The notes: generated from the sequence alone by a model not told the origin. A stretch of 64,000 bases of DNA from IMGVR_UViG_3300044641_009805:62001-126000; one strand, 5' to 3'; positions 143 through 17,735 are shown, counted from the first letter of the stretch. Program-made: numbers and translations.

Positions 143-216
143 GCCGCTGTAGCTCAGACGGATAGAGCAGATCATTCCTAACGATCAGGCCACAGGTTCG
201 ACTCCTGTCAGCGGTG
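143..216 (+). tRNA. tRNA-Arg (anticodon CCT)
   Basis: Acceptor GCCGCTG/CAGCGGT, D-arm GCTC/GAGC, anticodon loop TT-CCT-AA (175-181) with one A-C mismatch closing the stem, T-loop TTCGACT; CCA not encoded. Confidence 0.9.
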
Positions 217-249
217 CAAAGTTAACCTCAAACAAGGTAAGGTAGAACC

Positions 250-1092
250 ATGGACACGCAAGAGACGCTTCAACGGGCAGCTCAGCTATTGCGAGTAGCT
301 GACGCACTCATCATCACGGCTGGAGCAGGAATGGGGGTGGATAGCGGTCTGCCCGATTTCCGAGGAGATGAAGGTTTCTGGAACGCCTATCCGGCGTACA
401 AGCACCTTGGTCTCACCTTCTCCGACATGGCCAACCCGAGGTGGTTTGAGGATAACCCGGCGTTGGCATGGGGATTCTATGGTCACCGGCTCAACCTGTA
501 CCGAGCGACCCAACCTCACGCAGGCTTCGACGTTCTTAAGCGTCTTGCTCGAGGCATGAAGCATGGTGCCTTCGTCTTCACGTCTAACGTGGATGGTGCC
601 TTCCAGAAGGCTGGTTTCGACCCTGATCGTATCGTGGAATGCCATGGATCCATCCATCACGTCCAGTGTACAAAGGGATGTGGCATCGGCATTCTGCCTG
701 CAGAACGTGTTAAGATCGACGTGGATTCCAAGACGTTTGAGGCCCAGAGCCCGCTACCCGCCTGCCCGCGCTGCGGAGAGCTCTTGAGGCCAAACATCCT
801 GATGTTTGGCGATCCGGGATGGAATTTCTCTCGTGCCGATGAGCAAGACGAGAGGATGACGGAGTGGGTCCGGACCTTAGCAGATCGTCATGTCGCAACC
901 GTTGTCATCGAGTTGGGCGCAGGCAAACACATCCCCAGCGTGCGGGCGAAGAGTTCTTTGTTGTCAAACAAACTCAATGCTCCACTCATTCGCATCAATA
1001 CTCGAGATTCCGATGGTTTCCCCAATACGTTGTCGTTGCCGATGAAGGCAAAGGAGGCTCTCATCGAACTGGAAATCTTGTCAAAATCTTAA
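250..1092 (+). CDS. Sir2/CobB-family NAD-dependent deacylase
   Basis: GAGMGVDSGLPDFRG, TSNVDG, ECHGS, two Cys pairs, RPNILMFGD, ELGAG sirtuin motifs. Confidence 0.92.
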   Translation: MDTQETLQRAAQLLRVADALIITAGAGMGVDSGLPDFRGDEGFWNAYPAYKHLGLTFSDMANPRWFEDNPALAWGFYGHRLNLYRATQPHAGFDVLKRLARGMKHGAFVFTSNVDGAFQKAGFDPDRIVECHGSIHHVQCTKGCGIGILPAERVKIDVDSKTFEAQSPLPACPRCGELLRPNILMFGDPGWNFSRADEQDERMTEWVRTLADRHVATVVIELGAGKHIPSVRAKSSLLSNKLNAPLIRINTRDSDGFPNTLSLPMKAKEALIELEILSKS

Positions 1093-1375: not shown

Positions 1376-1626
1376 GCTGGAATTACCGAGTTGTCCGCAA
1401 GATCCTCTCTGGTGAAGGATACACCACAACTCAGTACGGAATCCATGAGGTCTACTACGATGACGATCACGTACCGACTTCATGTACCGTCAACCCTGTC
1501 ACCCCTTATGGTGAGTCCGAGGACGAGTTGGCCCAAGACGTGCGGCATTACGCCTCGGCCTTGGAGAAGCCGGTTCTTGATTACGATTCGATCGGTGTAA
1601 AGTCAGAGTCGAACGTGGTAGAGTAG
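1372..1626 (+). CDS. Phage hypothetical protein (WNYRV...IHEVYY type)
   Basis: ATGA overlap with the upstream stop; similar to 2579-2839. Confidence 0.75.
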   Translation: MSWNYRVVRKILSGEGYTTTQYGIHEVYYDDDHVPTSCTVNPVTPYGESEDELAQDVRHYASALEKPVLDYDSIGVKSESNVVE

Positions 1627-1630
1627 AACC

Positions 1631-1765
1631 ATGAAGAACAAGAGGAAGCAAAACCCTATCGCCGTGGCCATGACTCTTCGACACGCCACGACGACAACCC
1701 GTATGAAGGATCGTCGTAACCGGCGCCCGAAGGACGCCCGCCACAAGGAGGACTGGTACAAGTAG
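1631..1765 (+). CDS. 44-aa basic peptide, leaderless (not in ORF track)
   Basis: ATG 6 nt after TAGAGT box; MKNKRKQNPIAVAMTLRHATTTTRMKDRRNRRPKDARHKEDWYK. Confidence 0.75.
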   Translation: MKNKRKQNPIAVAMTLRHATTTTRMKDRRNRRPKDARHKEDWYK

Positions 1766-2172: not shown

Positions 2173-2214
2173 TCAGGTAGTGTAAAGTCTCAAGGAAAGT
2201 GATATATTAAGACC

Positions 2215-2493
2215 ATGACCGAGGTTCTTGAGTCGATTCCGATTGATCCCATCGTAGAACACCCGACGGATGACATCGCAGCTGGGCCTCTACTTGAGAT
2301 CATGTTCGAAGGAGTTTGGATCCTGGCAGAGGAGGACGTGTTCGGGTGTTGGACTGGGTTGCGGAGGAAGAACGGCGAAGAGATCCATGGGTCGATCTAT
2401 CCTCTCGGGGGGAAGACGTTCTACACAGGTTCTCGGGTCTGCGGGTGCAAGGCATGTCAGGAACATGTGGAGGCGAAGTTCAAGAAGAACTGA
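2215..2493 (+). CDS. Hypothetical protein, leaderless
   Basis: ATG 6 nt after TATATT box; C-terminal CGCKAC. Confidence 0.75.
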   Translation: MTEVLESIPIDPIVEHPTDDIAAGPLLEIMFEGVWILAEEDVFGCWTGLRRKNGEEIHGSIYPLGGKTFYTGSRVCGCKACQEHVEAKFKKN

Positions 2494-3284: not shown

Positions 3285-3324
3285 CTTGTTGTAAAGTCAC
3301 TGAAACAAATGATAGGGTATAATC

Positions 3325-3537
3325 ATGCGGATCTTGCCGACAGACAACGTCGACCTGACGTACTACTCTTCTTCACATCTTAGGTCGATCGGCGAAGCTC
3401 TTGTCGAACGTTTGAAGAAGGGTCAGGTAAGCCTGGTCGGGCTAGATCAAGCTGCTCTAGCGGCTGCAAAATCAGGGATGCCGACACTCCGCGATGTTCT
3501 CAGGTTGAAGGAGGCCTGCAGGCTTGCGGGGGTGTGA
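3325..3537 (+). CDS. Hypothetical protein, leaderless
   Basis: ATG 6 nt after TAGGGT box of copy 3290. Confidence 0.7.
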   Translation: MRILPTDNVDLTYYSSSHLRSIGEALVERLKKGQVSLVGLDQAALAAAKSGMPTLRDVLRLKEACRLAGV

Positions 3538-5109: not shown

Positions 5110-5146
5110 GTGCAAATCTGCACCTGAACAAGATATAAACAGCATG

Positions 5147-5317: not shown

Positions 5318-5351
5318 TTACACGCACGTGTACACGGGAGCGGTTTTTTGA

Positions 5352-5738
5352 ATGAAGCGATCTGACACCGAGATGTTGCTGATGGCCGCCGGTGCAGGCC
5401 TGCGTAAGTCCGACCTACGGGCATTCAGACTTGGTGCAGTAGGCATCCGGAACGATGGTATCCTCGTATCGGCATCCAATGGTCCTGCCCCTTTCCCCCA
5501 TCCTGATGCCCATGCTGAGGCTCGGCTGACGATGAAGCTGACTCCCGGGTCTGAGATCTGGGTGGCACGTGTTCGGAAGGATGGAACCCTTGGTATCGCC
5601 CGGCCTTGTCCCCGGTGCATGGTGCGTATCCGGGCCGCCGGGGTATCTCGAGTGGCCTACACGATTTCAGATATAGAACATGGAGTGATCCATTTGCACT
5701 CCGGTGGTGAAGTAATGAAGCCGATGAGAGGGCGATGA
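5352..5738 (+). CDS. Zn-dependent cytidine/dCMP deaminase-fold protein
   Basis: HAE ... PCPRC deaminase motif. Confidence 0.85.
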   Translation: MKRSDTEMLLMAAGAGLRKSDLRAFRLGAVGIRNDGILVSASNGPAPFPHPDAHAEARLTMKLTPGSEIWVARVRKDGTLGIARPCPRCMVRIRAAGVSRVAYTISDIEHGVIHLHSGGEVMKPMRGR

Positions 5739-5741
5739 AGC

Positions 5742-5933
5742 ATGCGTGTCAAGAGAATGAAAGAAGGCAAACGTGTGACGCATGAGATGTCGCACAGGGA
5801 GAAGCTTCACTACGATCCTCACCTCGACGTGTACTGGATCGTGACGTTGTTGCCTGACGGGACGCAACACATCGGGTCGCCGTTCGCCACGAGCGCCTTG
5901 GATACCCTGTACAACGCATCTTGGGGGTCGTGA
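5742..5933 (+). CDS. Hypothetical protein
   Basis: Co-directional ORF; start uncertain. Confidence 0.5.
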   Translation: MRVKRMKEGKRVTHEMSHREKLHYDPHLDVYWIVTLLPDGTQHIGSPFATSALDTLYNASWGS

Positions 5934-5987
5934 AAAAAAAGCGCGGGAGCAGTGCAAAGTTTGCGGAAGAAAGTGTATACTGGGACC

Positions 5988-6176
5988 ATGGACCACGTCA
6001 AGAAGCTCACGGTCGTCGACGCAGACAACTCCCGCGAGTACCGCATCGAGGTGGAAGAGGGCCCGCTGCCTTACACGACGCGGATCGTGTTCGGGCCAAG
6101 CTTCTCGATCACCCTCCAGAACGAGGACGTCGCGACGCTCGCTCAGCTTCTCATGCAGGCTTCTTCGGACGTCTGA
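5988..6176 (+). CDS. Hypothetical protein, leaderless
   Basis: ATG 6 nt after TATACT (5976-5981). Confidence 0.75.
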   Translation: MDHVKKLTVVDADNSREYRIEVEEGPLPYTTRIVFGPSFSITLQNEDVATLAQLLMQASSDV

Positions 6177-6230
6177 AAAAAGTTCTCCACCCGGTGCAAA
6201 GTTCCACTTCGAAAATGTATATATAGGATC

Positions 6231-6593
6231 ATGAACAGCATCAAGTACGTGGCCATCCTCAACGACACCATCAAGACCCTCCGACTCAATGTCGATCCGG
6301 CGCAGCTGAACCACCTGCGTGCCGCCGCCGCGGAGATCGACCAACTCCGTGGAGAGGTCGCCGACCTCGCCTTCGGCCTGTCGAAACGGCTCGCCGCCTA
6401 CGCGGCCGACATCGACGCTGGCCGCACCAGCGTCGAGCTACCTACCGCGTCGATGAAGGGTGCGAACGACCTTCTCTTCATGCAAAAGAAGAACGACGCC
6501 CTCCTGCGAAAAGCCGAGGGCTTCCCGCTCCTCCTCACCGGGGCTCTCGGTTTCGAAGCCGAGAAGAAGTTCTTCGAACTCATCCGGGGCTGA
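6231..6593 (+). CDS. Hypothetical protein, paralog of 13595-13957
   Basis: Promoter copy 6195; AAAEIDQLR...KRLAAYAADIDAGRT...FFELIRG. Confidence 0.8.
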   Translation: MNSIKYVAILNDTIKTLRLNVDPAQLNHLRAAAAEIDQLRGEVADLAFGLSKRLAAYAADIDAGRTSVELPTASMKGANDLLFMQKKNDALLRKAEGFPLLLTGALGFEAEKKFFELIRG

Positions 6594-6647
6594 AAAAAAG
6601 TTCTCCCCTCGGTGCAAAGTTCTACCTCGAAAAGGTATACTGAAGCC

Positions 6648-6920
6648 ATGAACACCTTCCCGATCATCCTCGACGGTTCGAAGTTCGACTGGTACAACGC
6701 CTCCGCCGCGCACGGCATGGGATCGATCAGCGATCATCCTGGCTTCCCGCAGTCCGGCTGGGCACCGGGTCAGGTCGCGGTCCGCAGCCACCGTACGGGC
6801 AAGGTGGTGGCCTTCAAGTTCGTCGAGATCGCCAACGACGGCGAGGGCAACGTCAGCCTCAACTACGAGGGCACTCTCCCCGACGGCCGCTACTGCGCAC
6901 TTTCTCTCGCGGTCGGCTGA
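6648..6920 (+). CDS. Hypothetical protein, leaderless
   Basis: ATG 6 nt after TATACT (6636-6641). Confidence 0.75.
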   Translation: MNTFPIILDGSKFDWYNASAAHGMGSISDHPGFPQSGWAPGQVAVRSHRTGKVVAFKFVEIANDGEGNVSLNYEGTLPDGRYCALSLAVG

Positions 6921-6961
6921 GGGCAGTGCAAAGTCAACCTCAGGTAAGGTAAGGTAGAACC

Positions 6962-7192
6962 ATGAAGCGAAACTCCTCTCCCAAGTCGAAGGTTCTCGAG
7001 CTGGCTTCCTTCTGCGTCTCGGAAGGCACACCCCTCGAGGTCCGCAGCACCCGCATCAAGGGGCGGTTCGGTGGCGACTTCCTCGTCGAGGTCGACGCGG
7101 GCACTCAGGTCTTGGCCCGAGCCCGCCACCGCAACTGGCGCACGGCCTACAAGCTTCTCGGCATCGAACTGTCACGCCGGGGTGTCGCCTGA
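6962..7192 (+). CDS. Hypothetical protein, leaderless
   Basis: ATG 6 nt after TAAGGT. Confidence 0.75.
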   Translation: MKRNSSPKSKVLELASFCVSEGTPLEVRSTRIKGRFGGDFLVEVDAGTQVLARARHRNWRTAYKLLGIELSRRGVA

Positions 7193-7228
7193 GTGCAAAG
7201 CGCACGGTGAATGAGGTAAGATAGAACC

Positions 7229-7960
7229 ATGGACGCCACACCCCGGATCGAAGCCCTCCGCACCGCTAAGGCCATCATCGGCTCTCACGGTGTGGTTGCG
7301 CACATGAACAAGTACAACCGAGAAGTCCTCGCTCGGGAGGTGACCGAGGGATCGACGGGGATGCGGTGCGACTTCAACCTGGACCCCGCTCGCAGCGCCT
7401 GGCACGAGTCCAACCCGTCGGTCACGTTGGTGGTCGCCTACAATGCGGACCCGAAGGGGGCACAGCTCAATGATGAAGGTGCCATGGTGCTAGAAAACTA
7501 CCTACGTATCGCCGTGGGGACTTCAGGCGGCGACATGGACCTAGAGACGCTGAAGCAGCGGGAAAGCATGGTCTCGATGGTTGCCATGCTGGGAGAAATG
7601 CTGACAACGACGTTGCCCCAGAAGATCACGTTGACCATGGAGTCACCCGCTCAGGTGGTCGAGAGGACACAACGCCAGCACGAGCAGTTCGTTGGCAAGC
7701 AAATCTACGACAACCTCGGTGAGGCGGCCTTCAAGGGCCTCCGCGTCGATGGCTCAGGCCGATTCGTACGCCTCACTTCCACCTACGCTTCTGTGGCCGG
7801 AAAGTACCCGGATTCTGGGACCTACCGGTTCCGTCACGTCCGTCGAGTTGACCGTAGGGGTTGCCCCAAGGAAGTCGCCAACTATTCGATCCGGGTGTTC
7901 GGGTGTGGAGACGGTAGCCTCCCTCCTTCGGTCGCGATTCATCGCATCAAGGCAGTGTAA
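7229..7960 (+). CDS. Hypothetical protein, leaderless
   Basis: ATG 6 nt after TAAGAT; its TAA lies inside the next TGTAAA box. Confidence 0.8.
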   Translation: MDATPRIEALRTAKAIIGSHGVVAHMNKYNREVLAREVTEGSTGMRCDFNLDPARSAWHESNPSVTLVVAYNADPKGAQLNDEGAMVLENYLRIAVGTSGGDMDLETLKQRESMVSMVAMLGEMLTTTLPQKITLTMESPAQVVERTQRQHEQFVGKQIYDNLGEAAFKGLRVDGSGRFVRLTSTYASVAGKYPDSGTYRFRHVRRVDRRGCPKEVANYSIRVFGCGDGSLPPSVAIHRIKAV

Positions 7961-7990
7961 AGTTCCTCAGAGAGGTGATAGAGTAGAACC

Positions 7991-8017
7991 ATGGAAACGA
8001 TCAAGATCGGCATCTGA
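7991..8017 (+). CDS. 8-aa leaderless upstream ORF METIKIGI
   Basis: ATG at the canonical position 6 nt after TAGAGT; TGA at 8015-8017. Confidence 0.45.
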   Translation: METIKIGI

Positions 8018-8055
8018 CCCAATCCACCCGCCAACCTTCCGCCCAGGAGAACTAC

Positions 8056-8451
8056 ATGTCGACTCGCTCTTTCATCGGAATCCAGAATCTCGACGGCACG
8101 GTCACCGGCGTCTACTGCCACCATGATGGATATCTCGACGGCGTCGGAGCGACCCTCAAGGCCCACTACACGACGGTCCGCCAGGTGCTCGACCTCGTGG
8201 CGCTCGGCTCGTTGTCCTCTCTCCATGAGGACCTCGACTACACGCAGGCCTACCATCGTGACCGTGGTGATGACCTCGACATCTCCACCTACGACTCCCC
8301 TGTTGACATCAGCTTCGACGACGGAGGCTACGAGTTCGTCTACCTCTTCCGGCCGTCGGATGAGCGAGGATCGACCTATAGCTGGCACTACGCAGACCGT
8401 GAGGTCTTCGGCAAAGGTCCCGAGTTCAAGCCCCTCGCCTTCGCGGTGTAA
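8056..8451 (+). CDS. Conserved phage hypothetical protein (STRS.IG...YCHHDGY type)
   Basis: AGGAG SD; motif I recognise from other phages, function unknown. Confidence 0.8.
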   Translation: MSTRSFIGIQNLDGTVTGVYCHHDGYLDGVGATLKAHYTTVRQVLDLVALGSLSSLHEDLDYTQAYHRDRGDDLDISTYDSPVDISFDDGGYEFVYLFRPSDERGSTYSWHYADREVFGKGPEFKPLAFAV

Positions 8452-8481
8452 AGTCAACCCCCAACAAGATAAGGTAACAAC

Positions 8482-8724
8482 ATGACACGACGAGTTACGA
8501 ACAAGCTTCTCGAGATGATGGAAGAGGGCGCCTTGGATGCCGAGGTGCTGGTGAGGGCCTGCCTGACCTTCATGTCGGAGGCCGACGTGGCCGAGATGGC
8601 CGTGGGTGAGGGGTTCCTCGAGGAGGAGGACGCAGAGATCGACGAGGACGAAGATGAGGATGAGGTAGGCGAGGATGATGAGGAGGAAGAGCCCCTCTCA
8701 ACCTTCGGGGTGGACGACGACTGA
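8482..8724 (+). CDS. Highly acidic small protein, leaderless
   Basis: C-terminal D/E tract EEEDAEIDEDEDEDEVGEDDEEEE. Confidence 0.8.
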   Translation: MTRRVTNKLLEMMEEGALDAEVLVRACLTFMSEADVAEMAVGEGFLEEEDAEIDEDEDEDEVGEDDEEEEPLSTFGVDDD

Positions 8725-8776
8725 AAAAGTGCGGGCGGCGGTGCAAAGTCCTGTGTGATCGTGGTAGATTGGAACC

Positions 8777-9520
8777 ATGCCGATCATCAAGAAGAGCTAC
8801 GCCTACGGTCCCGGCCCCTCCACGTCGGAGGTGTACTTCCAGCACCGCGTCCTGCGGATCGAGAAGACCACGGAGACCCGCAACTGGTCGGACACGCTCG
8901 ACTACTCGGACCACCGCTCGACGGAGTGCACCTGGGCCCTCGTGTGGCTCGGTACCCGCGGCGTTCCAGCCCGCGATGCCCACTACGCCGGCGGTCGCAC
9001 CGTCGCCTACTTCGACGCCCTCAAGTGGGACGCCGACAAGATCCGCGACCTCGAGGTCCACGAGCAGTTTGCCTGGGTGGATTGCACCAACCTCTTCGTG
9101 GATCGTAACGGCTACTCGCTGGTGCCTTCGGTCGATCCTTTCGACATGCAGCTCCTCCACGGCGGTCCGGAGATGATCGAGGGGCTCGCGGTCTGGGAGG
9201 CCTACCACACGGCTCGGATCGCCCGTGCGGAGGCGGAACGGATGGCCAAGGTCGCCGAAGCTGCTGCCCAGGTCGCCGCCGAGAAGGCGAAGAGGGATGC
9301 CCGCCAAGCAAAGCGAGATGCCAAGCTCCAGGCCGAGAAGGCGGTGGCTGAGGGTCAGTTGGCCCGGATCCCCGCCAAGGGCACCACGGTCACGGTCGAT
9401 GGGTTCACCGGCAAGGTCTTCTGGATCGGTGTCTCCAAGTACCGCGGCAAGTGGAATGCCCGGGCAGGGGTGAAGGACCCCAAAGGGAACGTCCAGTGGG
9501 TCCCGGCAGATAAGTTCTGA
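8777..9520 (+). CDS. Hypothetical protein with Ala/Lys coiled coil and C-terminal beta domain
   Basis: ATG 6 nt after TAGATT; GC3-rich codon pattern. Confidence 0.8.
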   Translation: MPIIKKSYAYGPGPSTSEVYFQHRVLRIEKTTETRNWSDTLDYSDHRSTECTWALVWLGTRGVPARDAHYAGGRTVAYFDALKWDADKIRDLEVHEQFAWVDCTNLFVDRNGYSLVPSVDPFDMQLLHGGPEMIEGLAVWEAYHTARIARAEAERMAKVAEAAAQVAAEKAKRDARQAKRDAKLQAEKAVAEGQLARIPAKGTTVTVDGFTGKVFWIGVSKYRGKWNARAGVKDPKGNVQWVPADKF

Positions 9521-9537
9521 CCCTCGTCCCACCCCCA

Positions 9538-9616
9538 GGATGACCCAGGAGAGGTTCCTGAAACTGGGGGTGGGGTAACCTAGGTCGAATTGTCCTAGGC
9601 CTCTCCTGGGTCATCC
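9538..9616. repeat. 79-bp palindromic element, copy 2
   Basis: Same 17-bp arms (extendable to 21 bp, 9534-9620), N45, GGTAACC (9574-9580) on the dyad axis. Confidence 0.95.
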
Positions 9617-9682
9617 TGGGTGACCTGAGAAAAAGTGCCCATGTCGGTGCAAAGTTCCACCGGGAAAGGGTATACTGGGACC

Positions 9683-9769
9683 ATGAAGAACGCCGCCGCT
9701 GACATCCTCGGAGCCATCGTCACCGTCGCCACCACGGCCTTCGCGGCCTGGTGGATGATGGCCGCCTGA
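9683..9769 (+). CDS. 28-aa hydrophobic peptide, leaderless (not in ORF track)
   Basis: MKNAAADILGAIVTVATTAFAAWWMMAA; own promoter copy 9648. Confidence 0.7.
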   Translation: MKNAAADILGAIVTVATTAFAAWWMMAA

Positions 9770-9809
9770 ACCCGGTGCAAAGTCACCCATGACAAGATAT
9801 ATACTTGTC

Positions 9810-10136
9810 ATGAAACTGACCACGAAACAGCTAAGAAGCTTGATCAACGAAGTCCTTGAAGAAGAAGGAGTGACACCGGCCATGACCACCGACCAACTCA
9901 AGGAGATCGCGGCGGAACTCACCAAGGCGGAGAAGGCGGCCTTCCTCAACGCCCGGCCTTACCCCCCGGATGGTCGGGTCCAACTGCCTTCGGGCCGGGT
10001 CCTCGACGTCGGCTCTTGGGAAGCCGCCATGGAACTCAACACCCTCGTCATGTTGCCGCAGAAGAAGATCGGAACAGGCCGAGGTGGTCTGAAGGGTCGC
10101 CCGGCCTGGCTGAAAAAAGCGCTCGGCTACTACTGA
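9810..10136 (+). CDS. Hypothetical protein with MKLT..QLR.LI.E N-terminal motif
   Basis: MKLTTKQLRSLINEVLEEE; promoter copy 9776. Confidence 0.8.
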   Translation: MKLTTKQLRSLINEVLEEEGVTPAMTTDQLKEIAAELTKAEKAAFLNARPYPPDGRVQLPSGRVLDVGSWEAAMELNTLVMLPQKKIGTGRGGLKGRPAWLKKALGYY

Positions 10137-10175
10137 GCGGTGCAAAGTCAACCTCGAACAGGATAAGGTAGAACC

Positions 10176-10397
10176 ATGGACAACATCAAGATCTTCGTGG
10201 TGCAGCAGGGTGCAATGTCCTATTCCAACGTCGACGAGGTCACCTACGTGTTCCTCAACGAGGCGGACGCTCGGGTCAAGTACGCGTACCTCCTCGAGAA
10301 CCGGGTGGTCGAGTGCGACTCTTACGACAGGACCTGGACTTCCCTCCACGCGGTGACTCCTGGCGACGAGGTGTCGCAGGACAACAAGATCGCCTGA
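10176..10397 (+). CDS. Hypothetical protein, leaderless
   Basis: Promoter copy 10141. Confidence 0.75.
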   Translation: MDNIKIFVVQQGAMSYSNVDEVTYVFLNEADARVKYAYLLENRVVECDSYDRTWTSLHAVTPGDEVSQDNKIA

Positions 10398-10433
10398 GTG
10401 CAAAGTCAACCTCGAACAGGATAAGGTAGAACC

Positions 10434-10751
10434 ATGAACATCATCGAGTACGTCTCCGGCGGCCGTAGGTACCGGGCCACCCTCGTCCCTGGGAAGCACA
10501 TCATCGTGGAGTGCTTCCGGGATGATCAGTTCGTCTCCATGCGGAAGTTCGAGGTCGGCGATGTGGCCGAGTACGACTCCTTCAACCTCCGCTACACCGC
10601 GCCCATCGTCTCCATCGGCAAGTCCACGGTCACGTTCAATGTGTACGACAGCAAGAGGCGCCTCAAGGCTGAGAACTTCGCCTGGCGCAATTGGAACTTC
10701 AACGCCGAGGAGATCGCCCGTCGGAACGCGGAGACGAGCCAGCACATCTGA
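10434..10751 (+). CDS. Hypothetical protein, leaderless
   Basis: Promoter copy 10399 (identical to 10141). Confidence 0.8.
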   Translation: MNIIEYVSGGRRYRATLVPGKHIIVECFRDDQFVSMRKFEVGDVAEYDSFNLRYTAPIVSIGKSTVTFNVYDSKRRLKAENFAWRNWNFNAEEIARRNAETSQHI

Positions 10752-10792
10752 ACCCGGTGCAAAGTTCGACCGTGATAGGGTATACTAGGACC

Positions 10793-11035
10793 ATGAACAA
10801 GTTCGATGCTTTCGCGGCCAAGGCGAAGATCCTCGGGGAGATGCTGGAGACCGTCGGCAAGCTGCGGGACTCCGACCTGGAGAAGCTCGTGGCGCCGATG
10901 GAAGGCATGACGGTGTGGTCCCACGACGATGTTGAGTCGCTGACTGACTCGATCAACCACCTCTTCGAGGAGCTGATGATGCTCCAGGAAGAACTCCAGT
11001 CCTTCACCAGCCCGGCTGAGAGGTCGAGTGGCTGA
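10793..11035 (+). CDS. Hypothetical protein, leaderless
   Basis: ATG 6 nt after TATACT (10781-10786). Confidence 0.75.
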   Translation: MNKFDAFAAKAKILGEMLETVGKLRDSDLEKLVAPMEGMTVWSHDDVESLTDSINHLFEELMMLQEELQSFTSPAERSSG

Positions 11036-11039
11036 CCCA

Positions 11040-11117
11040 GGATGACCCAGGAGAGGCCCTGAGAATTCCCGGTGGGGTAACCTCCGCCTCGAACCTCCGG
11101 CCTCTCCTGGGTCATCC
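11040..11117. repeat. 78-bp palindromic element, copy 3
   Basis: Same 17-bp arms, N44, GGTAACC at 11076-11082. Confidence 0.95.
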
Positions 11118-11174
11118 TCGAGGGAGTGCAAGGGGACGGTGCAAAGTTCCACCGGAGAGGGATAAGATGGACCC

Positions 11175-11705
11175 ATGACAGTGATATCGTGGATCGCCCT
11201 CCTCGTCGCCATAGTGGCCCTTGCTGACTCGCAAGAGACTCGAGCACGCCTCAAGACACTCAGCCGCATCCCCGGTCCACGAGGGCTCCGAGGTCTACGT
11301 GGGGCGCCAGGACCGAGAGGAGAGGCCGGAGAGGTAGGCCCATGTGGCCCACCAGGACCCCAAGGTGAAACAGGTCCCCAAGGAACCCCAGGCATTCCTG
11401 GGCCAAAGGGAGACCCAGGAGACGGTGGGCCAATGGGACCCCAAGGCCCGACAGGGGAAGCAGGACCCAAGGGTGAGACCGGTCTAACGGGTGACCAGGG
11501 TCCAAGCGGCCCAACAGGTCCCCAGGGTCCTCGAGGTGAGGCAGGACCGACCGGACCCCAAGGTGATATGGGACCACCTGGCCCACGGGGAGAAGTGGGA
11601 CCTAGAGGTCCCCAGGGCTTCAAGGGTGAGTCCAGCGGACCGGCCGAACGGGAACTCCTCGCCCATTGGGCCCACGAGGCACTGAAGCCCCGAGGCGAAG
11701 AATGA
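11175..11705 (+). CDS. Membrane-anchored collagen-like protein
   Basis: N-terminal hydrophobic [14 protein letters not shown] followed by a long uninterrupted Gly-X-Y tract. Confidence 0.85.
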
Positions 11706-11751
11706 CACGAGATCGGTGCAAAGTCACCCCTGAATAGGGTATACTGGGACC

Positions 11752-11949
11752 GTGAAGATCATCTACCTGTTGTTCAGCGACGTGACCTTCGGGACCCACG
11801 AGCACGGCTTCATCCCGCGCAAAGTCGTTCAGGATCCGGACGACGAGGACGCCCGCTACGAGCGCCACCTGAAGTCCAAGGGCATCAATGCCCGTGTGTA
11901 CGACGGCAAGGTGAAGCTCCTTGAGCCCGGGGAAAAGTTCACGATCTGA
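11752..11949 (+). CDS. Hypothetical protein, leaderless (GTG)
   Basis: GTG 6 nt after TATACT. Confidence 0.7.
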   Translation: MKIIYLLFSDVTFGTHEHGFIPRKVVQDPDDEDARYERHLKSKGINARVYDGKVKLLEPGEKFTI

Positions 11950-11985
11950 GTGCAAAGTTCAACCTCGAAAGGATATACTAGGATC

Positions 11986-12213
11986 ATGAACAACGCAATC
12001 CAACCCGGCGATCGAGTCATCCTCTCCCCCGTCAACGGCCTCGGGTGCAGTGCCTTCCTCGTCCTGGAGGTCGACCCCAACGTGCATCCGACCCACCGCC
12101 TCTACGTCGAAGGCCGGAATGGCCAGCGCTGGTGGGCCCGGATCGAGGGAGCGCGGATCCTCCCGGAGGAACCTGAGGGGAACTTCACCTCGAGCCGTCA
12201 CGGCGATTGGTGA
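11986..12213 (+). CDS. Hypothetical protein, leaderless
   Basis: ATG 6 nt after TATACT. Confidence 0.75.
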   Translation: MNNAIQPGDRVILSPVNGLGCSAFLVLEVDPNVHPTHRLYVEGRNGQRWWARIEGARILPEEPEGNFTSSRHGDW

Positions 12214-12267
12214 GAAAAAGCCCTCCATCCGGTGCAAAGTCAACCCCGAACGAGGTAAGGTAGAACC

Positions 12268-12462
12268 ATGGACACCGCATTCGAAGTCTTCATCTCCGAC
12301 ACCATCCATGGCACCTCCGACCGTCGGGCATACAAGACCCGGGAGCGGGCCGTGGCTCGGTACGAGGAGCTGACGCGGAACCACAAACGCAATGGCCACT
12401 CCGCCGTGATCCTCCGCCAGGGCAAAGCACAGATCTTCCCGGCACCGATCTGCGGCCGCTGA
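12268..12462 (+). CDS. Hypothetical protein, leaderless
   Basis: ATG 6 nt after TAAGGT. Confidence 0.75.
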   Translation: MDTAFEVFISDTIHGTSDRRAYKTRERAVARYEELTRNHKRNGHSAVILRQGKAQIFPAPICGR

Positions 12463-12498
12463 GTGCAAAGTTCACAGAGGAAAGGATATACTAGGACC

Positions 12499-12714
12499 AT
12501 GAAGAACATCATCACCCTCCTCAACGACGGCGAGACCTTCACCTCCGCGGAGGGCACCTCGGTCTGCTTCCTCTCCGACGACGACGTGGATCTCCTCGCC
12601 TCGGGTGAACGCACCATCGACGAGCTGGTCGGTGCCGTGGGCCGGCGACGGTACGACCTCACCAACCCGGCCCACCTCCGCCTCCTCGCGGACCGGCTCG
12701 AAAAGAACCGCTGA
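12499..12714 (+). CDS. Hypothetical protein, leaderless
   Basis: ATG 6 nt after TATACT. Confidence 0.75.
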   Translation: MKNIITLLNDGETFTSAEGTSVCFLSDDDVDLLASGERTIDELVGAVGRRRYDLTNPAHLRLLADRLEKNR

Positions 12715-12753
12715 CCGGTGCAAAGTTCGACTCCGAAAGGATATACTAAGACC

Positions 12754-12936
12754 ATGAAGATCTCCCGCGCCCAAATGACCTTCGACCGCAACAAGGACGC
12801 CGTGGGCATCCACCTCACCCTCGACGACGCGAAGCGGATCCGGGCAGCCTTGAGCGACCTGGACGGGGAAGACCTGGACAACTACGGCGGGATCCTCGAA
12901 CGCCTGCGGAAGGCCATTCCCCAACAGTGGGGCTGA
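12754..12936 (+). CDS. Hypothetical protein, leaderless
   Basis: ATG 6 nt after TATACT. Confidence 0.75.
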   Translation: MKISRAQMTFDRNKDAVGIHLTLDDAKRIRAALSDLDGEDLDNYGGILERLRKAIPQQWG

Positions 12937-12988
12937 AAAAGTTCACCCCTCGGTGCAAAGTTCGACCCCGAAAGGATAAGGTAGAACC

Positions 12989-13174
12989 ATGGACGCCAAA
13001 CACATCGCCCAGCTCATCGCCCAGGTGACCGACCTCCTCACCGCGGGGAAGATCGACCACGAGATGCAGGCCAACCTCACCGCCTCCCTCTGGGAGCTGG
13101 CGGCGCGGAAGGACCTCCGCGAGGAGGTGACGGAAATCCTTCGCCAGGACGCCCTCGAAGAGATGGGGGTGTGA
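12989..13174 (+). CDS. Hypothetical protein, leaderless
   Basis: ATG 6 nt after TAAGGT. Confidence 0.75.
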   Translation: MDAKHIAQLIAQVTDLLTAGKIDHEMQANLTASLWELAARKDLREEVTEILRQDALEEMGV

Positions 13175-13242
13175 CGGGGACCCTCTGAAAAAAAAGCCTC
13201 GGGGCGGTGCAAAGTTCCACCGGGAAAAGGTATACTAAGACC

Positions 13243-13521
13243 ATGGAAAACATCTCCAAGGGTTTCAAAAGCTGGCAAGGCATCGCTCGGATTCCGTCGG
13301 CGGACAATGCCGTCCAAATCTGGGATCTCATGGCAGCCGACTGGACCTACCACAAGGACAACTTTCCGGACCGCGTCCCGGCCGGGTTCGAAAACTGCTC
13401 CTTTGAGGACCTCGAGTTCACCTCCCATCCCCGCAAGGACCGTCTCCTGGCTCGGCCGGCCGGCACCAAAATCCCCTTCCACATCTGGCGGGGAGCCCTC
13501 CAAGGCTTCAATACAAAGTGA
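13243..13521 (+). CDS. Hypothetical protein, leaderless
   Basis: ATG 6 nt after TATACT. Confidence 0.75.
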   Translation: MENISKGFKSWQGIARIPSADNAVQIWDLMAADWTYHKDNFPDRVPAGFENCSFEDLEFTSHPRKDRLLARPAGTKIPFHIWRGALQGFNTK

Positions 13522-13527
13522 CCGGTT

Positions 13528-13556
13528 GGGGGAGGACCTTCGGGTCCTCCCCCTTT
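13528..13556 (+). terminator. Intrinsic terminator-like hairpin
   Basis: GGGGGAGGACC-TTCG-GGTCCTCCCCC-TTT (cUUCGg loop) just after a stop. Confidence 0.8.
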
Positions 13557-13594
13557 CCGTGCAAAGTTCCCACCAGAAAAGGTACACTGAGACC

Positions 13595-13957
13595 ATGAAG
13601 AACCCCGGCAAGGGCGAGTCCACCCTGGCCACCACCATCCAGTCACTCGGCCTCGAGGCACACATGGACAAGGCCAACTTCCTCGAACTCCGTGAGGCGG
13701 CCTACACGATCGACCGCCTCCGTGCCGACCTCACCGACTGCTCTCGGCTCATGGCGAAACGTCTCACCTCCTTCGCGGATGACATCGCCGATGGCCGCAC
13801 TCACATGTCTCCCCCCACGGGCAGCTCCCTCCTCGACGACATCACGGAGAAGACCGCGGTGCTCAATGAGAAGACCTCGGCCTTCCCCACCCTCCTCCGC
13901 CTCGTGCTCGGCCCCGACGGGTCGAAGGAGTTCTTCCGGATCCTCCGCGGAGTGTGA
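13595..13957 (+). CDS. Hypothetical protein, paralog of 6231-6593
   Basis: ATG 6 nt after TACACT; AAYTIDRLR...KRLTSFADDIADGRT...FFRILRG. Confidence 0.8.
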   Translation: MKNPGKGESTLATTIQSLGLEAHMDKANFLELREAAYTIDRLRADLTDCSRLMAKRLTSFADDIADGRTHMSPPTGSSLLDDITEKTAVLNEKTSAFPTLLRLVLGPDGSKEFFRILRGV

Positions 13958-14007
13958 AGCTCCACCTCGTCAGCAGCTGACACGCGGGAGGATGATATAT
14001 ATCCTCC

Positions 14008-14295
14008 ATGAAGCTAACGTCAGAACAACTACGCATCATCATCGACGACGTCATCGCCGAGGACCTCAAGAACGTCCGCGGCAAACACGAACACACCATC
14101 GCAGGCACCACCGCCCTTCGACGAATGCACGATGCGCCCGGCGTACTCGAGGCGCTATCACAGATCACGGACCCCAAAGAACTGGCGCAGGTCATCGAGG
14201 CCATCATCGACGCGGTGCCCATGGTCAAACGCGGCGACGTCCTGGAAACATTGGCGAAGGTGACGCGCCACGAACGATCAACGCGGAGGTTCTGA
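14008..14295 (+). CDS. Hypothetical protein with MKLT motif
   Basis: MKLTSEQLRIIIDDVIAE; preceded by GATATATAT. Confidence 0.75.
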   Translation: MKLTSEQLRIIIDDVIAEDLKNVRGKHEHTIAGTTALRRMHDAPGVLEALSQITDPKELAQVIEAIIDAVPMVKRGDVLETLAKVTRHERSTRRF

Positions 14296-14296
14296 C

Positions 14297-14395
14297 ATGA
14301 ACCTCAACAGATCACACCTCATAGCCTTCCTCGAAGGCGCGGCCATCGGCATCATCATCGGCTGGGTGCTGTGGTGGGGCCTGCTGCAAGGTTGA
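14297..14395 (+). CDS. 32-aa single-TM peptide
   Basis: MNLNRSHLIAFLEGAAIGIIIGWVLWWGLLQG, 1 nt after upstream stop. Confidence 0.55.
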   Translation: MNLNRSHLIAFLEGAAIGIIIGWVLWWGLLQG

Positions 14396-14400
14396 ACTAC

Positions 14401-14585
14401 AAGGGGCCTGTGGAGAGAGCAAACGGGCCTAGGGGCCGCCCCCTTGCAAGGGCCCCTCAAAGGCCCCTCTTTAGGCCCCTAAAATGGGGCCCCGGCCCCG
14501 CCCCTAAAAGGGGCATTTTCTGTGGGGTTTTTGGGGCCGCCGGGGGGCGCTAAACCCGCGCGCAAATCTCGAGAAATTTTGAGAT
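14401..14585. other. Non-coding GGCCCC/GGGGCC repeat tract; candidate replication origin
   Basis: GGCCCCT at 14451, 14462, 14474, further GGCCCC/GCCCCT to 14505, inverted GGGGCC copies; + strand is C/A-rich to the left and G/T-rich to the right. Confidence 0.5.
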
Positions 14586-14634
14586 TAAAGCGGTCCTTAC
14601 CCACGCTCGTGGGGGCACATGCCTATTTATAAGC

Positions 14635-15053: not shown

Positions 15054-15096
15054 ATGTCAGGTAGCGTGATATATATGTGTTGAGACAGGAGACGAC

Positions 15097-16623: not shown

Positions 16624-16905
16624 ATGGCAAAGAAAGCAAAGACAAACAAGATCAACGTTGATTCCCCGATTCCTTTTCCTCAGGTGCACACGTTCGATGA
16701 GTTGGCTGTCATCGATGACGATTCATTGAACAACATGCAGCGATCGCTGACGGATTCCATCTCTAGGGTGAATAGTCATGGGTTGAATCCTTCAGCATGG
16801 GAGGTTGAGATGTGTTATGTACAGCGAGAGCTGCAGATTCGAACAGCTCGTCGTGAGGCCCACGCAAAGTATGTTTCGACTGTTTCCGTCACGGAGGAGG
16901 ATTGA
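16624..16905 (+). CDS. Hypothetical protein
   Basis: WEVEMCYVQRELQIR; overlaps the sigma start. Confidence 0.7.
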   Translation: MAKKAKTNKINVDSPIPFPQVHTFDELAVIDDDSLNNMQRSLTDSISRVNSHGLNPSAWEVEMCYVQRELQIRTARREAHAKYVSTVSVTEED

Positions 16906-17735
16906 ATTTGAGTTCTCAAGGCACAATTTCTCGAGAAAACTCTCGAGAGTCAGCCTTCGGCGGCGATTCAATGAATCGCTACTTTTCTTCTCTAAAGAAC
17001 CATCAACAGCTTTCGCATGAGCAGATGATGGAGCTCTTTAAGGTCCTCGAAGCAGGGGGTCTTGACGCGCCTCTCGCGAAGAAAAAGTTGATCGAGACCA
17101 ATCTTCGTTTGGTCGTTTATGTGGCGAAGCAGTACAAGAACCACAGCATGCCTCTCGAAGACATCATTCAAGAAGGCAACATGGGGTTGATGAGAGCGAT
17201 TGAGAAGTTTGATTGGAAGAAGGGATTTAGGTTCTCAACCTACGCGACCTGGTGGGTTAGGCAAGCGATTGGTCAACACATCCTGAAGCAGAAGCGGGTC
17301 ATCAGAATGTCCGCGCATGCCGTGAATACTCAAAAGAAGTTGTTGACAGCCGCCGAAGAATACAGGAACGCGATGGGATGTGAGCCAACTCCTGAAGAGT
17401 TGAAGGAGTTGACAGGCACTTCAGATGCAATCTTCAACGCGATGAGGATCAGTGGTCGATCGATTATTTCGCTTGATCAACCTCTGTCCTCAGATCCAGA
17501 TGCTGACACGATTGAAGATAAGATTGAGGCGGATCCTACGTCAGATCCACTCGAGATTTTTTCTTCCAAGCAAATGTTAGAGTTGGCTCAACGAGTCATC
17601 GTGGGCCTTTCTCCAAAGGAAGCTGCGATTTTGAGGTTACGGTTCGGGCTGGTCGACGACGTGTTGAGCGATGAATCTTATAAGATCACTCAAGAGCAAG
17701 TTGAGAAGATCTCAATGGGAGAAGGTCTCACGTGA
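16902..17735 (+). CDS. Sigma70-family RNA polymerase sigma factor lacking region 4.2 HTH
   Basis: LIETNLRLVVYVAKQY, DIIQEGNMGLMRAIEKFD, GFRFSTYATWWVRQAI, SLDQPL, LSPKEAAILRLRFGL; then ends without a TLEEIG...TRERIRQIE-like segment. Start may be ATG 16971. Confidence 0.93.
   Translation: MNLSSQGTISRENSRESAFGGDSMNRYFSSLKNHQQLSHEQMMELFKVLEAGGLDAPLAKKKLIETNLRLVVYVAKQYKNHSMPLEDIIQEGNMGLMRAIEKFDWKKGFRFSTYATWWVRQAIGQHILKQKRVIRMSAHAVNTQKKLLTAAEEYRNAMGCEPTPEELKELTGTSDAIFNAMRISGRSIISLDQPLSSDPDADTIEDKIEADPTSDPLEIFSSKQMLELAQRVIVGLSPKEAAILRLRFGLVDDVLSDESYKITQEQVEKISMGEGLT

What the first reader, a model, noticed from the sequence alone, without database searches (positions are those of the whole stretch)
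5941..13597. Promoter repeats look like junctions of shuffleable gene cassettes
Seen: upstream stop codons abut or lie inside the motif (TGA-GTGCAAAG at 7190, 10395, 11947, 12460; TAA within GTGTAAAG at 7958, 8449). Spacer bases are conserved more than a promoter needs and fall into two subfamilies (GTCAACCYC...TAAGGTAGAACC and GTTC(C/G)AC...TATACT..GACC). 10140-10178 and 10398-10436 are an exact 39-bp direct repeat flanking one gene. Known: promoter-containing PeSL repeats in T4-type phages such as RB49 mediate modular gene exchange. Inference: an integron-like but integrase-free array in which [promoter+ORF] units are gained, lost or duplicated by recombination between repeats.
Basis: partly seen in the sequence, partly recalled or inferred. 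Interest (0 to 1): 0.72.

Follow-up and report, generated by a model that had tools for sequence, protein, structure and literature searches.

The report
Promoter repeats that shuffle phage genes
A lake-water relative of phage T4 carries about 40 tiny genes, each behind a near-identical 39-base promoter that ends at the start codon, and comparison with wild relatives shows genes being gained, lost, swapped and reordered by crossovers inside those promoters.

Summary
GTG[CT]AAAG-N16-TAnnnT-N6-ATG occurs 20 times in the window against 0 expected. There are 22 copies in 5941-13597 and about 37 in the 278-kb genome.

The genome is a distant T4-like jumbo phage from lake-water metagenomes. The -10 hexamer ends 6 nt before each ATG, so the mRNAs should be leaderless; this is inferred, because no RNA was examined.

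About 25 IMG/VR contigs of the same clade carry the motif in the same neighbourhood. The same ORF families appear in different orders among them.
- 46 of 83 internal homology breakpoints fall inside the promoter, against 10% expected.
- Nucleotide-level junctions show hybrid promoters. Crossovers occur in the octamer, in the -10 hexamer or at the ATG.
- One lake sample holds forms both with and without cassette 12718-12952.
- The genome encodes a UvsX/RecA recombinase and no integrase.

This is a new variant of the known PeSL shuffling of T4-type phages. It differs in being leaderless, in having a -35 box unlike sigma-70's, and in mostly lacking a stem-loop. It sits in a GC3 0.81 island of a genome whose structural genes have GC3 about 0.26.

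The parts
214..1092 (+). Cassette: promoter 214-252, leaderless ORF 250-1092 (280 aa, Sir2 domain). The promoter abuts the 3' end of tRNA-Arg(CCT) 143-217.
1595..1765 (+). Cassette: promoter 1595-1633 (GTGTAAAG variant), ORF of 44 aa.
2180..2493 (+). Cassette: promoter with spacing 1 nt shorter, ORF 2215-2493 (92 aa).
3289..3537 (+). Cassette: degenerate octamer TTGTAAAG, ORF 3325-3537 (70 aa).
5952..6176 (+). Cassette: ORF of 62 aa (family 11). In relative A the same promoter drives a family-3 ORF instead.
6194..6593 (+). Cassette: ORF 6231-6593 (120 aa, family 2), a paralogue of cassette 13559. Absent from relatives A and D at this position.
6612..6920 (+). Cassette: ORF of 90 aa (family 17). 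It is 99.3% identical to relative B but 92.3% to relative A.
6926..7192 (+). Cassette: ORF of 76 aa (family 8). It is 98.7% identical to A but 93.5% to B, the opposite of its left neighbour, so there is a crossover between the two.
7193..7960 (+). Cassette: ORF of 243 aa. The upstream TGA abuts the octamer, and its own TAA lies inside the next octamer.
7955..8451 (+). Promoter 7955-7993 followed by an 8-codon mini-ORF (7991-8017), then an ORF 8056-8451 (131 aa) preceded by AGGAG. This is the one unit in the range with a leader.
8446..8724 (+). Cassette: ORF of 80 aa (acidic C-terminus), family 4.
8741..9520 (+). Cassette: ORF of 247 aa (family 1). It is found in 10 contig pieces behind five different upstream neighbours.
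9647..9769 (+). Cassette: ORF of 28 aa, hydrophobic. Its promoter is a hybrid of the two promoters that flank an extra 195-bp cassette in relatives A and D.
9775..10136 (+). Cassette: leaderless ATG at 9810, ORF of 108 aa.
10140..10397 (+). Cassette: ORF of 73 aa (family 36), flanked by the exact 39-nt promoter repeat.
10398..10751 (+). Cassette: ORF of 105 aa (family 28). Its orthologues in F and J have other promoters and other neighbours.
10757..11035 (+). Cassette: ORF of 80 aa, unique to this genome among the contigs compared.
11126..11133 (+). Truncated octamer (GTGCAAGG) 5 nt before the full promoter at 11139; a likely recombination scar.
11139..11705 (+). Cassette: ORF of 176 aa with collagen-like Gly-X-Y repeats.
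11716..11949 (+). Cassette: GTG start, ORF of 65 aa.
11950..12213 (+). Cassette: ORF of 75 aa (family 14).
12232..12462 (+). Cassette: ORF of 64 aa.
12463..12714 (+). Cassette: ORF of 71 aa (family 41). In relative C an 88.5% identical copy sits about 14 kb away, at the position of window -1396, bounded by the octamer on both sides.
12718..12936 (+). Cassette: ORF of 60 aa (family 3). It is precisely absent from relative E and from one contig of lake sample X8, which also holds the form that has it.
12953..13174 (+). Cassette: ORF of 61 aa (family 32). Its order relative to family 3 is inverted in relative D.
13207..13521 (+). Cassette: ORF of 92 aa. Absent from relative E, whose junction keeps a truncated-motif scar.
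13559..13957 (+). Last cassette: ORF of 120 aa (family 2). From 13560 onward relative E is 99.5% identical.
9538..9617 (+). Long hairpin element with conserved 17-nt arms (CCTCTCCTGGGTCATCC and its complement) between a stop codon and the next promoter. Other copies lie at 2094-2173 and 11040-11118.
13528..13553 (+). GC-rich hairpin (-29.9 kcal/mol) between the stop codon at 13521 and promoter 13559.
16902..17735 (+). Phage-encoded sigma-70-family factor (region 2 at 80 bits, region 3 weak, region 4 barely detectable), 3 kb beyond the array. It is a candidate reader of the promoters.

Best explanation
The region is the right arm of a hyperplastic, probably early-expressed gene compartment of an uncultured T4-like jumbo phage. 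It consists of about 37 monocistronic units.

**Anatomy of a unit (shown).** Each unit starts with a 39-nt promoter: a -35-like octamer GTGCAAAG, a 16-nt spacer, a -10 hexamer TAnnnT, then 6 nt ending in ACC, then ATG. The previous gene's stop codon, almost always TGA, lies 0-37 nt before the octamer.

**Expression (inferred).** Transcription should begin at or next to the A of the ATG, giving leaderless mRNAs.

**Recombination (shown from outcomes, mechanism inferred).** Dozens of near-identical promoters lie in the same orientation 200-900 bp apart. The phage's general homologous recombination (a UvsX/RecA gene is present) can therefore cross over between any two of them. Within one genome this gives deletion or duplication. 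Between co-infecting relatives it gives insertion, replacement or relocation. Every product keeps an intact promoter fused to an intact ORF, so it stays viable.

**The promoter's two roles.** The promoter is both the expression signal and the portable homology. It does not always travel with its ORF.
For: **The motif is real and has promoter geometry.**
- 20 copies against 0 expected.
- 168 of 170 distinct promoters across the clade have TAnnnT.
- The first T of the hexamer lies exactly 12 nt before the ATG. That is the published signature of leaderless genes (PMC3160421).

**The ORFs are real genes in the predicted frame.**
- GC by codon position is 0.64/0.44/0.81.
- Differences between orthologues fall 209/135/705 by codon position, with 613 synonymous against 283 non-synonymous codon changes.

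**Relatives exist.** An IMG/VR scan found 53 loci from about 25 contigs with many motif copies. They are syntenic with the same anchor genes.

**Shuffling.**
- Family order differs among contigs. Families 3 and 32 are inverted between this genome and D. Between the anchors family 7 and family 2 this genome has 13 cassettes and D has 6, with only 2 shared.
- 46 of 83 internal blastn breakpoints lie in the promoter ±5 nt, against 10% expected.
- Junctions resolved to the nucleotide: the hybrid promoter at 9647 (crossover in GGTATACT); the exact loss of cassette 12718 in E; the family-41 cassette in C bounded by the octamer on both sides; the promoter at 5952 retained in A with a different ORF.
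- Adjacent cassettes show opposite nearest relatives: 6612 is 99.3% to B and 92.3% to A, while 6926 is 93.5% to B and 98.7% to A. Against C, per-cassette identity steps from 99.5% to 65.7% to 92.4%.
- Lake sample X8 holds contigs both with cassette 12718 (depth 12.6) and without it (depth 10).

**Machinery.** RecA/UvsX is present at 217 bits. No tyrosine or serine recombinase was found.
Against: - No RNA data were examined, so promoter activity and the leaderless start are inferred from geometry alone.
- Genes are packed so tightly that 'gene boundary' and 'promoter' are nearly the same place. Selection for intact genes alone would therefore also enrich breakpoints there.
- Some breakpoints lie 10-50 nt upstream of the octamer or at the hairpin element (5902-5925).
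- Over about 9 kb with 14 promoters this genome and relative A show no cassette difference, so exchange is not uniformly frequent.
- The metagenome evidence comes from assembled contigs, not from single molecules.
- The genome record is estimated to be 84% complete, so a recombinase could have been missed.
Confidence: 0.75

Rival explanations
1. The repeats are only promoters. Cassette differences arise by illegitimate recombination anywhere, and selection keeps the products that happen to break at gene boundaries. Here those boundaries coincide with the promoter because there is no other intergenic DNA.
For: The gap from stop codon to octamer is 0-37 nt, so boundary and motif cannot be separated. 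A minority of breakpoints lie just upstream of the motif. Truncated-motif scars exist at 11126 and in relative E.
Against: Junction promoters are in-register hybrids of the two parental promoters, with no lost or added bases. Crossovers fall in shared stretches of 8-10 nt. No partial ORF remnants were seen between cassettes. The promoter's 3' half tracks the downstream ORF (0.75 against a background of 0.67), while the 5' half tracks both neighbours only weakly. That pattern is expected if exchanges occur inside the promoter.
Confidence: 0.14
2. The motif is not a promoter but a binding or processing site. Candidates are a start-associated translation signal, an operator for a phage regulator, or an RNA-processing site within a long polycistronic transcript.
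For: The spacer (..gAaa.Gg) and the ACC before the ATG are more conserved than a promoter strictly needs. The -35 box does not match sigma-70 consensus. G-rich -10 variants such as TAAGGT resemble a Shine-Dalgarno core 7 nt before the ATG.
Against: T, A and T are invariant at hexamer positions 1, 2 and 6 in 168 of 170 copies, while the middle varies freely. The spacing is fixed at 16 nt to the octamer and 6 nt to the ATG. A-tracts lie at UP-element distance in a subset. A regulator site could coexist with the promoter, so this rival is not exclusive.
Confidence: 0.08
3. An integron-like site-specific system: the motif is an attC-like site cut by a dedicated recombinase.
For: The repeats are regularly spaced and bound single small ORFs. 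Exact 39-nt repeats flank cassette 10140.
Against: No Phage_integrase or Resolvase domain was found in the 278-kb record. Crossover positions differ between events (octamer, -10 hexamer, ATG end), unlike a fixed cleavage point. The motif has no attC-like imperfect palindrome, and every cassette has its own promoter.
Confidence: 0.02
4. Assembly artefact: a high-GC array from another organism was joined by mistake to a low-GC phage contig.
For: GC jumps from about 0.33 to about 0.61 within one contig. Many IMG/VR contigs end inside the array.
Against: Independent assemblies from other samples span the same junctions into the low-GC flanks: E at 99.5% over 6.4 kb, D at 92%. The GC decline is gradual over conserved genes. 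Lake-water runs from several separate studies hold 94-99% of the sampled words.
Confidence: 0.01

Closest known systems
PeSL (promoter-early stem-loop) cassettes of T4-type phages: RB49/phi1, T4/PST, KVP40/nt-1 (Arbiol et al. 2010, PMC2839356; Comeau et al. 2014, PMC4122927)
   Same: - The host genome is T4-like.
- Dozens of repeated intergenic promoter motifs lie directly upstream of small ORFan genes in a hyperplastic region.
- The upstream stop codon is embedded in or next to the motif, and some copies have an A-rich tract upstream.
- Indels and replacements between close relatives are bounded by the motif.
- No dedicated recombinase is involved.
   Different: - The -35 element is GTGCAAAG, not sigma-70 consensus.
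- There is no Shine-Dalgarno sequence; the ATG sits at the predicted transcription start (leaderless).
- Most units lack any stem-loop: only 4 of 22 junctions have a hairpin, and 3 of those are a separate long element.
- The repeat is shorter (39-60 nt against about 100 nt).
- The array is GC-rich (GC3 0.81) in an AT-rich genome.
- Mini-circles were not tested.
[quoted passage not shown] 2011, PMC3160421)
   Same: TAnnnT has its first T 12 nt before the start codon. The middle three positions carry little information.
   Different: Here the pattern occurs as about 40 near-identical copies in a phage, each with a strongly conserved -35-like octamer and ACC before the ATG. The host is unknown.
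Integron gene-cassette arrays
   Same: Arrays of single small ORFs separated by a repeated element. Cassette content varies between close relatives.
   Different: There is no IntI, no attI or attC, and no common Pc promoter. Each cassette has its own promoter, and exchange points vary within the repeat, which indicates homologous rather than site-specific recombination.
T4 middle promoters (MotA box plus TAnnnT, sigma appropriation by MotA/AsiA)
   Same: A good TAnnnT -10 hexamer is combined with an upstream box unlike sigma-70's that contains TGC.
   Different: The box lies at -36 to -29, not centred at -30, and its sequence differs. No MotA or AsiA homologue was found. The phage instead encodes a sigma-70-family protein.
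Start-associated sequences of Cluster K mycobacteriophages (recalled from memory, not checked here)
   Same: A conserved short motif lies immediately upstream of many start codons in a phage of a high-GC host.
   Different: Those are described as translation-associated and are not known as recombination junctions. No test was made here.

Membership tests
PeSL cassettes of T4-type phages | Lies in a T4-like myovirus genome | tested here: met
   Gp23 capsid protein 258 bits, T4-type portal 246 bits, T4-type large terminase. The nearest capsid relatives are T4-like phages at 32-52% identity.
PeSL cassettes of T4-type phages | Many copies of an intergenic promoter motif directly upstream of ORFans, clustered in a hyperplastic region between conserved genes | tested here: met
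   About 37 copies in genome 51-76 kb. 22 of 24 ORFs have no Pfam or PHROG match. Conserved anchor genes lie on both sides in relatives.
PeSL cassettes of T4-type phages | Promoter matches the sigma-70 consensus (-35 TTGACA, -10 TATAAT) with an AT-rich upstream region | tested here: not met
   The consensus scan finds no + strand site in 5900-13700. The -35 box is GTGCAAAG. The -10 is TAnnnT. An A-tract is present upstream of only a subset.
PeSL cassettes of T4-type phages | A stem-loop (terminator or attenuator) is part of each motif | tested here: not met
No + strand terminator-like site was found, and overall fewer than in shuffles.
PeSL cassettes of T4-type phages | Shine-Dalgarno sequence and start codon at the 3' end of the motif | tested here: not met
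   The ATG follows the -10 hexamer by 6 nt in 34 of 37 units, which leaves no room for a leader.
PeSL cassettes of T4-type phages | Insertions, deletions and replacements between close relatives are bounded by the motif | tested here: met
PeSL cassettes of T4-type phages | Circular single-cassette DNAs (mini-circles) | not testable with these tools
   Only assembled contigs could be laid. 'Go-back' joints are explained equally well by alternative linear orders, as in relative E.
Integron | IntI tyrosine recombinase next to the array | tested here: not met
   No Phage_integrase match in the 278-kb record, which is estimated to be 84% complete.
Integron | Promoterless cassettes ending in attC, expressed from one Pc promoter | tested here: not met
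   Each ORF has its own complete promoter, and the repeat has no attC-like palindrome.
Leaderless (TA-led) bacterial genes | TAnnnT with its first T about 12 nt upstream of the start codon | tested here: met
   Exactly 12 nt in the 39-nt pattern. 168 of 170 promoters have TAnnnT. The criterion comes from PMC3160421.
Leaderless (TA-led) bacterial genes | Transcript 5' end at the start codon | not tested
T4 MotA-dependent middle promoters | MotA and AsiA encoded, with a MotA box centred at -30 | tested here: not met
   No MotA_activ or AsiA match. The octamer spans -36 to -29.

The most novel reading that the evidence does not exclude
A clade of freshwater T4-like jumbo phages keeps a compositionally separate early-gene compartment: GC3 0.81 against 0.26 in structural genes. 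The compartment is built entirely of leaderless promoter-ORF units. The 39-nt promoter serves at once as transcription start, translation start and portable recombination site. It is possibly read by the phage's own sigma factor. Cassettes circulate among co-infecting phages in the lake, perhaps as mini-circles, like an integron without an integrase.
Probability: 0.3. Interest if true: 0.78.

Novelty: new variant of a known kind. Interest (0 to 1): 0.6.

Why it matters
- **Reach of the mechanism.** Promoter-mediated modular shuffling was described for a few cultured T4-type coliphages and vibriophages. Here it operates in a very distant, uncultured freshwater branch with a different promoter architecture, and in wild populations: both alleles occur in one lake sample.
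- **A minimal cassette design.** The layout is stop codon, then -35 box, then -10 hexamer, then a start codon that is also the transcription start. Every recombinant is automatically expressible. This helps explain how phages keep sampling ORFan genes, likely host-takeover or anti-defence functions, at low cost.
- **Use for annotation.** The motif is a ready handle for finding and delimiting such genes in metagenomes.
- **An open question.** The extreme early/late codon-composition split, together with 14 phage tRNAs, is unusual in its own right.

Tried and rejected
- **Annotated phage collection.** Megablast of the array and of a structural stretch found nothing. The clade has no cultured or annotated close relative.
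- **Sigma-70 consensus and terminator scan.** No + strand sites, so the motif is not an E. coli-type promoter and has no built-in terminator.
- **MotA/AsiA.** Absent, so the T4 middle-promoter model was dropped.
- **Rfam on 1-18000.** Only the tRNA matched. The hairpin element is not a known RNA family.
- **Host inference.**
  - The sigma-factor search returned only unnamed metagenomic proteins.
  - The motif scan of prokaryote genome bins returned short phage-like fragments binned under inconsistent labels: Ca. Aquidulcis, Proteobacteria, Bdellovibrionota, Acidimicrobiales.
  - No host can be named.
- **'Go-back' joints in Logan contigs.** These were considered as evidence for circles and rejected. 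At least one (13172 to 9648, with the 16 letters between) is exactly the linear arrangement seen in relative E.
- **Two promoter subfamilies as separate lineages.** Rejected clade-wide.
- **Literature.** Searches for a description of this promoter or clade found nothing.

Full report
**1. What the window is**

The window is bases 62001-126000 of a single 278,435-bp IMG/VR virus record. The record is linear and CheckV estimates it as 84% complete.

It encodes a Gp23-type major capsid protein, a T4-type portal and a T4-type large terminase. The nearest annotated capsid genes belong to T4-like phages of Microcystis, Flavobacterium and Synechococcus, and to a 484-kb uncultured phage, at only 32-52% identity. 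Megablast against annotated phages finds nothing.

Lake-water metagenomes from several separate studies hold 94-99% of the region's sampled words. The genome is therefore a distant, uncultured, freshwater T4-like jumbo phage.

**2. The observation**

- The octamer GTGCAAAG occurs 21 times in the window, all on the + strand, against 2.6 expected.
- The full pattern GTG[CT]AAAG-N16-TAnnnT-N4-YC-ATG occurs 20 times against 0.00 expected.
It begins at 214 in the window. In the genome it extends leftward to about 51.3 kb, with promoters on the - strand left of about 59.8 kb and on the + strand from 59.97 to 75.6 kb.
- The two 39-mers at 10140 and 10398 are identical.

**3. Anatomy of a unit**

The consensus of 181 non-redundant copies from this genome and its relatives is c.GTGCAAAGTtc..c...gAaa.GgTAta.Tag.ACCATG.

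- **The -10 hexamer.** It is TAnnnT in 168 of 170 distinct promoters, with a free middle: TATACT, TAGGAT, TAAGGT, TATAGT and others.
- **Distance to the start codon.** The hexamer's first T lies exactly 12 nt before the A of the ATG. That is the published signature of leaderless genes, which are commonest in high-GC bacteria (PMC3160421).
- **The octamer.** It sits 16 nt upstream of the hexamer, where a -35 element belongs, but it does not match the sigma-70 consensus. The consensus scan finds no + strand site.
- **Upstream tract.** A subset of copies has TGA followed by an A-tract 16-18 nt upstream, at UP-element distance.
- **Terminators.** Intrinsic terminators are not enriched.

That these are promoters giving leaderless mRNAs is an inference from this geometry. 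No RNA was examined.

**4. The ORFs are real genes**

Array ORFs have GC 0.64/0.44/0.81 at codon positions 1/2/3. In 50 equal-length orthologous pairs, differences fall 209/135/705 by codon position, with 613 synonymous against 283 non-synonymous codon changes.

22 of 24 ORFs match nothing in Pfam or PHROGs. The exceptions are a Sir2-domain protein (250-1092) and a collagen-like repeat protein (11175-11705).

**5. Relatives**

A pattern scan of IMG/VR returned 53 loci from about 25 contigs, many with 5-16 motif copies. They share the conserved genes on both sides of the array, so the array occupies the same neighbourhood throughout the clade.

Five contigs are close enough for nucleotide comparison:

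| Label | IMG/VR contig | Identity to this genome |
|---|---|---|
| A | 3300042453_005804 | 95-98% |
| B | 3300035703_000516 | 92-96% |
| C | 3300022752_000054 | 88-92% |
| D | 3300022752_000015 | 84-92% |
| E | 3300002835_000483 | 99.5% from 13560 onward |

Many of these contigs end inside the array. This is expected where repeats and strain variation break assemblies.

**6.

*(a) Gene order is not fixed.* Clustering 259 cassette proteins into families gives different orders of the same families in different contigs.
- Between the shared anchors family 7 and family 2, this genome has 13 cassettes and D has 6. Only families 3 and 32 are shared, and they are in inverted order.
- Family 1 (247 aa) follows five different upstream neighbours.

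*(b) Breakpoints coincide with the motif.* 46 of 83 internal blastn alignment ends lie within the promoter ±5 nt, against 10% expected if uniform. Most of the rest lie within 50 nt upstream.

*(c) Junctions at nucleotide resolution.*
- Relatives A and D carry an extra 195-bp cassette at promoter 9647. This genome's single promoter equals their left promoter up to GGTATACT and their right promoter from there on. It is an in-register hybrid.
- E lacks cassette 12718-12952 exactly. The crossover is at or next to the octamer.
- C carries an 88.5% identical copy of cassette 12463-12717 about 14 kb away. It is bounded by GTGCAAAG on both sides.
- A keeps this genome's promoter 5952 (one mismatch) but fuses it to a family-3 ORF instead of family 11. 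The crossover is at the ATG end.
- The crossover position therefore varies between events. This indicates homologous rather than site-specific recombination.

*(d) Mosaicism.*
- Cassette 6612 is 99.3% identical to B and 92.3% to A. Its neighbour 6926 is 93.5% to B and 98.7% to A.
- Against C, consecutive cassettes read 99.5%, 94.4%, 95.7%, 65.7% and 92.4%.
- The promoter in front of the 65.7% ORF differs by one base.

*(e) Promoter halves.*
- The -10-to-ATG half follows the downstream ORF: identity 0.75 against a background of 0.67.
- The spacer follows both neighbours only weakly: 0.57 and 0.53 against 0.48.
- The 5' and 3' promoter types are unlinked across the clade (p = 0.18).

*(f) Within-sample variation.*
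- In Logan contigs of lake sample X8, a contig joins 12717 to 12953 (depth 10), skipping exactly one cassette. Another contig covers 12677-12998 intact (depth 12.6).
- In X5, a contig joins promoter 9647 to promoter 10398 in register.

**7. Machinery**

The genome encodes a RecA/UvsX-type recombinase at 217 bits. It has no tyrosine or serine recombinase and no MotA or AsiA.

A sigma-70-family gene lies 3 kb beyond the array at 16902-17735. It belongs to a large family found on big metagenomic contigs. Whether host sigma or this phage sigma reads the octamer is open.

**8. Interpretation**

The best explanation is a leaderless variant of the PeSL mechanism described for RB49/phi1 and other T4-type phages (PMC2839356, PMC4122927). 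Repeated promoters serve as portable homology for the phage's general recombination system. Whole genes are then deleted, duplicated, inserted, replaced or moved, and every product keeps a working promoter-ORF fusion.

Three of the seven PeSL features tested were not met: the sigma-70-consensus promoter, the stem-loop, and the Shine-Dalgarno sequence. It is therefore filed as a new variant of that kind rather than as a member.

The integron analogy is only functional.

The main rival is that selection for intact genes alone puts breakpoints at boundaries. It cannot be fully excluded, because boundary and promoter coincide. The in-register hybrid promoters and the absence of ORF remnants argue against it.

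**9. Limits**

- Transcription starts were not measured.
- Mini-circles were not tested.
- The host is unknown.
- The metagenome evidence rests on assembled contigs.

Noticed in passing
whole genome; window 6000-14500 against 28000-64000: Extreme compositional split within one phage genome. The array has GC 0.58-0.65 and GC3 0.81. Portal, terminase and tail-region genes have GC3 0.25-0.28. The capsid gene is intermediate at GC3 0.59. Relatives show the same step (L033, L014). This may reflect host-like codon usage for early and highly expressed genes.
   Followed up: partly
genome 52059-53806 (outside the window); window 143-217 and 20717-20789: The genome has 14 tRNA genes, 12 of them in one cluster inside the left arm of the array. 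Most have anticodons for A/U-ending codons (UGU, UGC, UCC, UUG, UCU, UUU, UUC and others). This fits AT-rich late genes in a GC-rich host. tRNA-Arg(CCU) ends inside the octamer at 214.
   Followed up: partly
window 2094-2173, 9538-9617, 11040-11118: An 80-nt hairpin element with conserved 17-nt inverted arms and variable interiors (folds of -57 to -63 kcal/mol, z -3.9 to -7.5). It always lies between a stop codon and the next promoter. Relatives A, B, C, D and F have a copy at the site equivalent to window 5902, where this genome has none, so the element is itself an indel. It has no Rfam match.
   Followed up: partly
window 16902-17735: A phage-encoded sigma-70-family protein (277 aa; region 2 strong, region 3 weak, region 4 barely detectable). 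It has hundreds of metagenomic homologues on contigs up to 357 kb. A motif-like sequence (GTGCAATG-N14-TATAAA) lies upstream at about 16550.
   Followed up: partly
window 7955-8451: One promoter copy is followed by an 8-codon mini-ORF and then by a gene with an AGGAG ribosome-binding site. This arrangement is conserved in relatives A, B and D. The copy at genome 59765 (- strand) also has only an 8-codon ORF.
   Followed up: no
window 11126-11146; L033 around 6965: Truncated motif copies lie directly before full promoters: GTGCAAGG plus 5 nt in this genome, and GTGTAAAG plus 12 nt in relative E. They look like scars of imprecise promoter-promoter exchange.
   Followed up: partly
window 14390-14560: A GC-rich stretch of GGGGCC/GGCCCC-type palindromic repeats lies right after the last small ORFs of the array, before GC content starts to fall. 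It may be a terminator or a boundary element.
   Followed up: no
window 11175-11705: A cassette encodes a 176-aa protein with an N-terminal hydrophobic segment and about 40 Gly-X-Y collagen-like repeats (Pfam Collagen, 5.5e-20). It is unique to this genome among the contigs compared.
   Followed up: no
window 250-1092 and 15605-16540: A Sir2-domain protein is expressed from an array promoter. A UvdE UV-endonuclease gene lies just beyond the array.
   Followed up: no
window 24442-26328: The major capsid gene encodes 628 aa. The Gp23 match falls in two stretches, the best covering residues 350-619, and tblastn aligns it in two pieces. This suggests a long N-terminal extension or an insertion.
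   Followed up: no
L062, L064, L067, L071-L073 (GTDB genome bins): Short contigs with 2-7 motif copies are binned into MAGs labelled Ca. Aquidulcis, Proteobacteria, Gammaproteobacteria, Bdellovibrionota and 'bacterium'. These are probably mis-binned phage fragments and give no usable host signal.
   Followed up: no
IMG/VR contigs behind L004, L005, L011, L014, L021, L024, L033, L038: At least eight independent assemblies end inside the array. In Logan contigs the 39-mer at 10398-10436 stands alone at about 3 times the flanking depth. The promoters act as assembly-graph nodes, so array content in short-read assemblies of this clade should be treated with care.
   Followed up: partly
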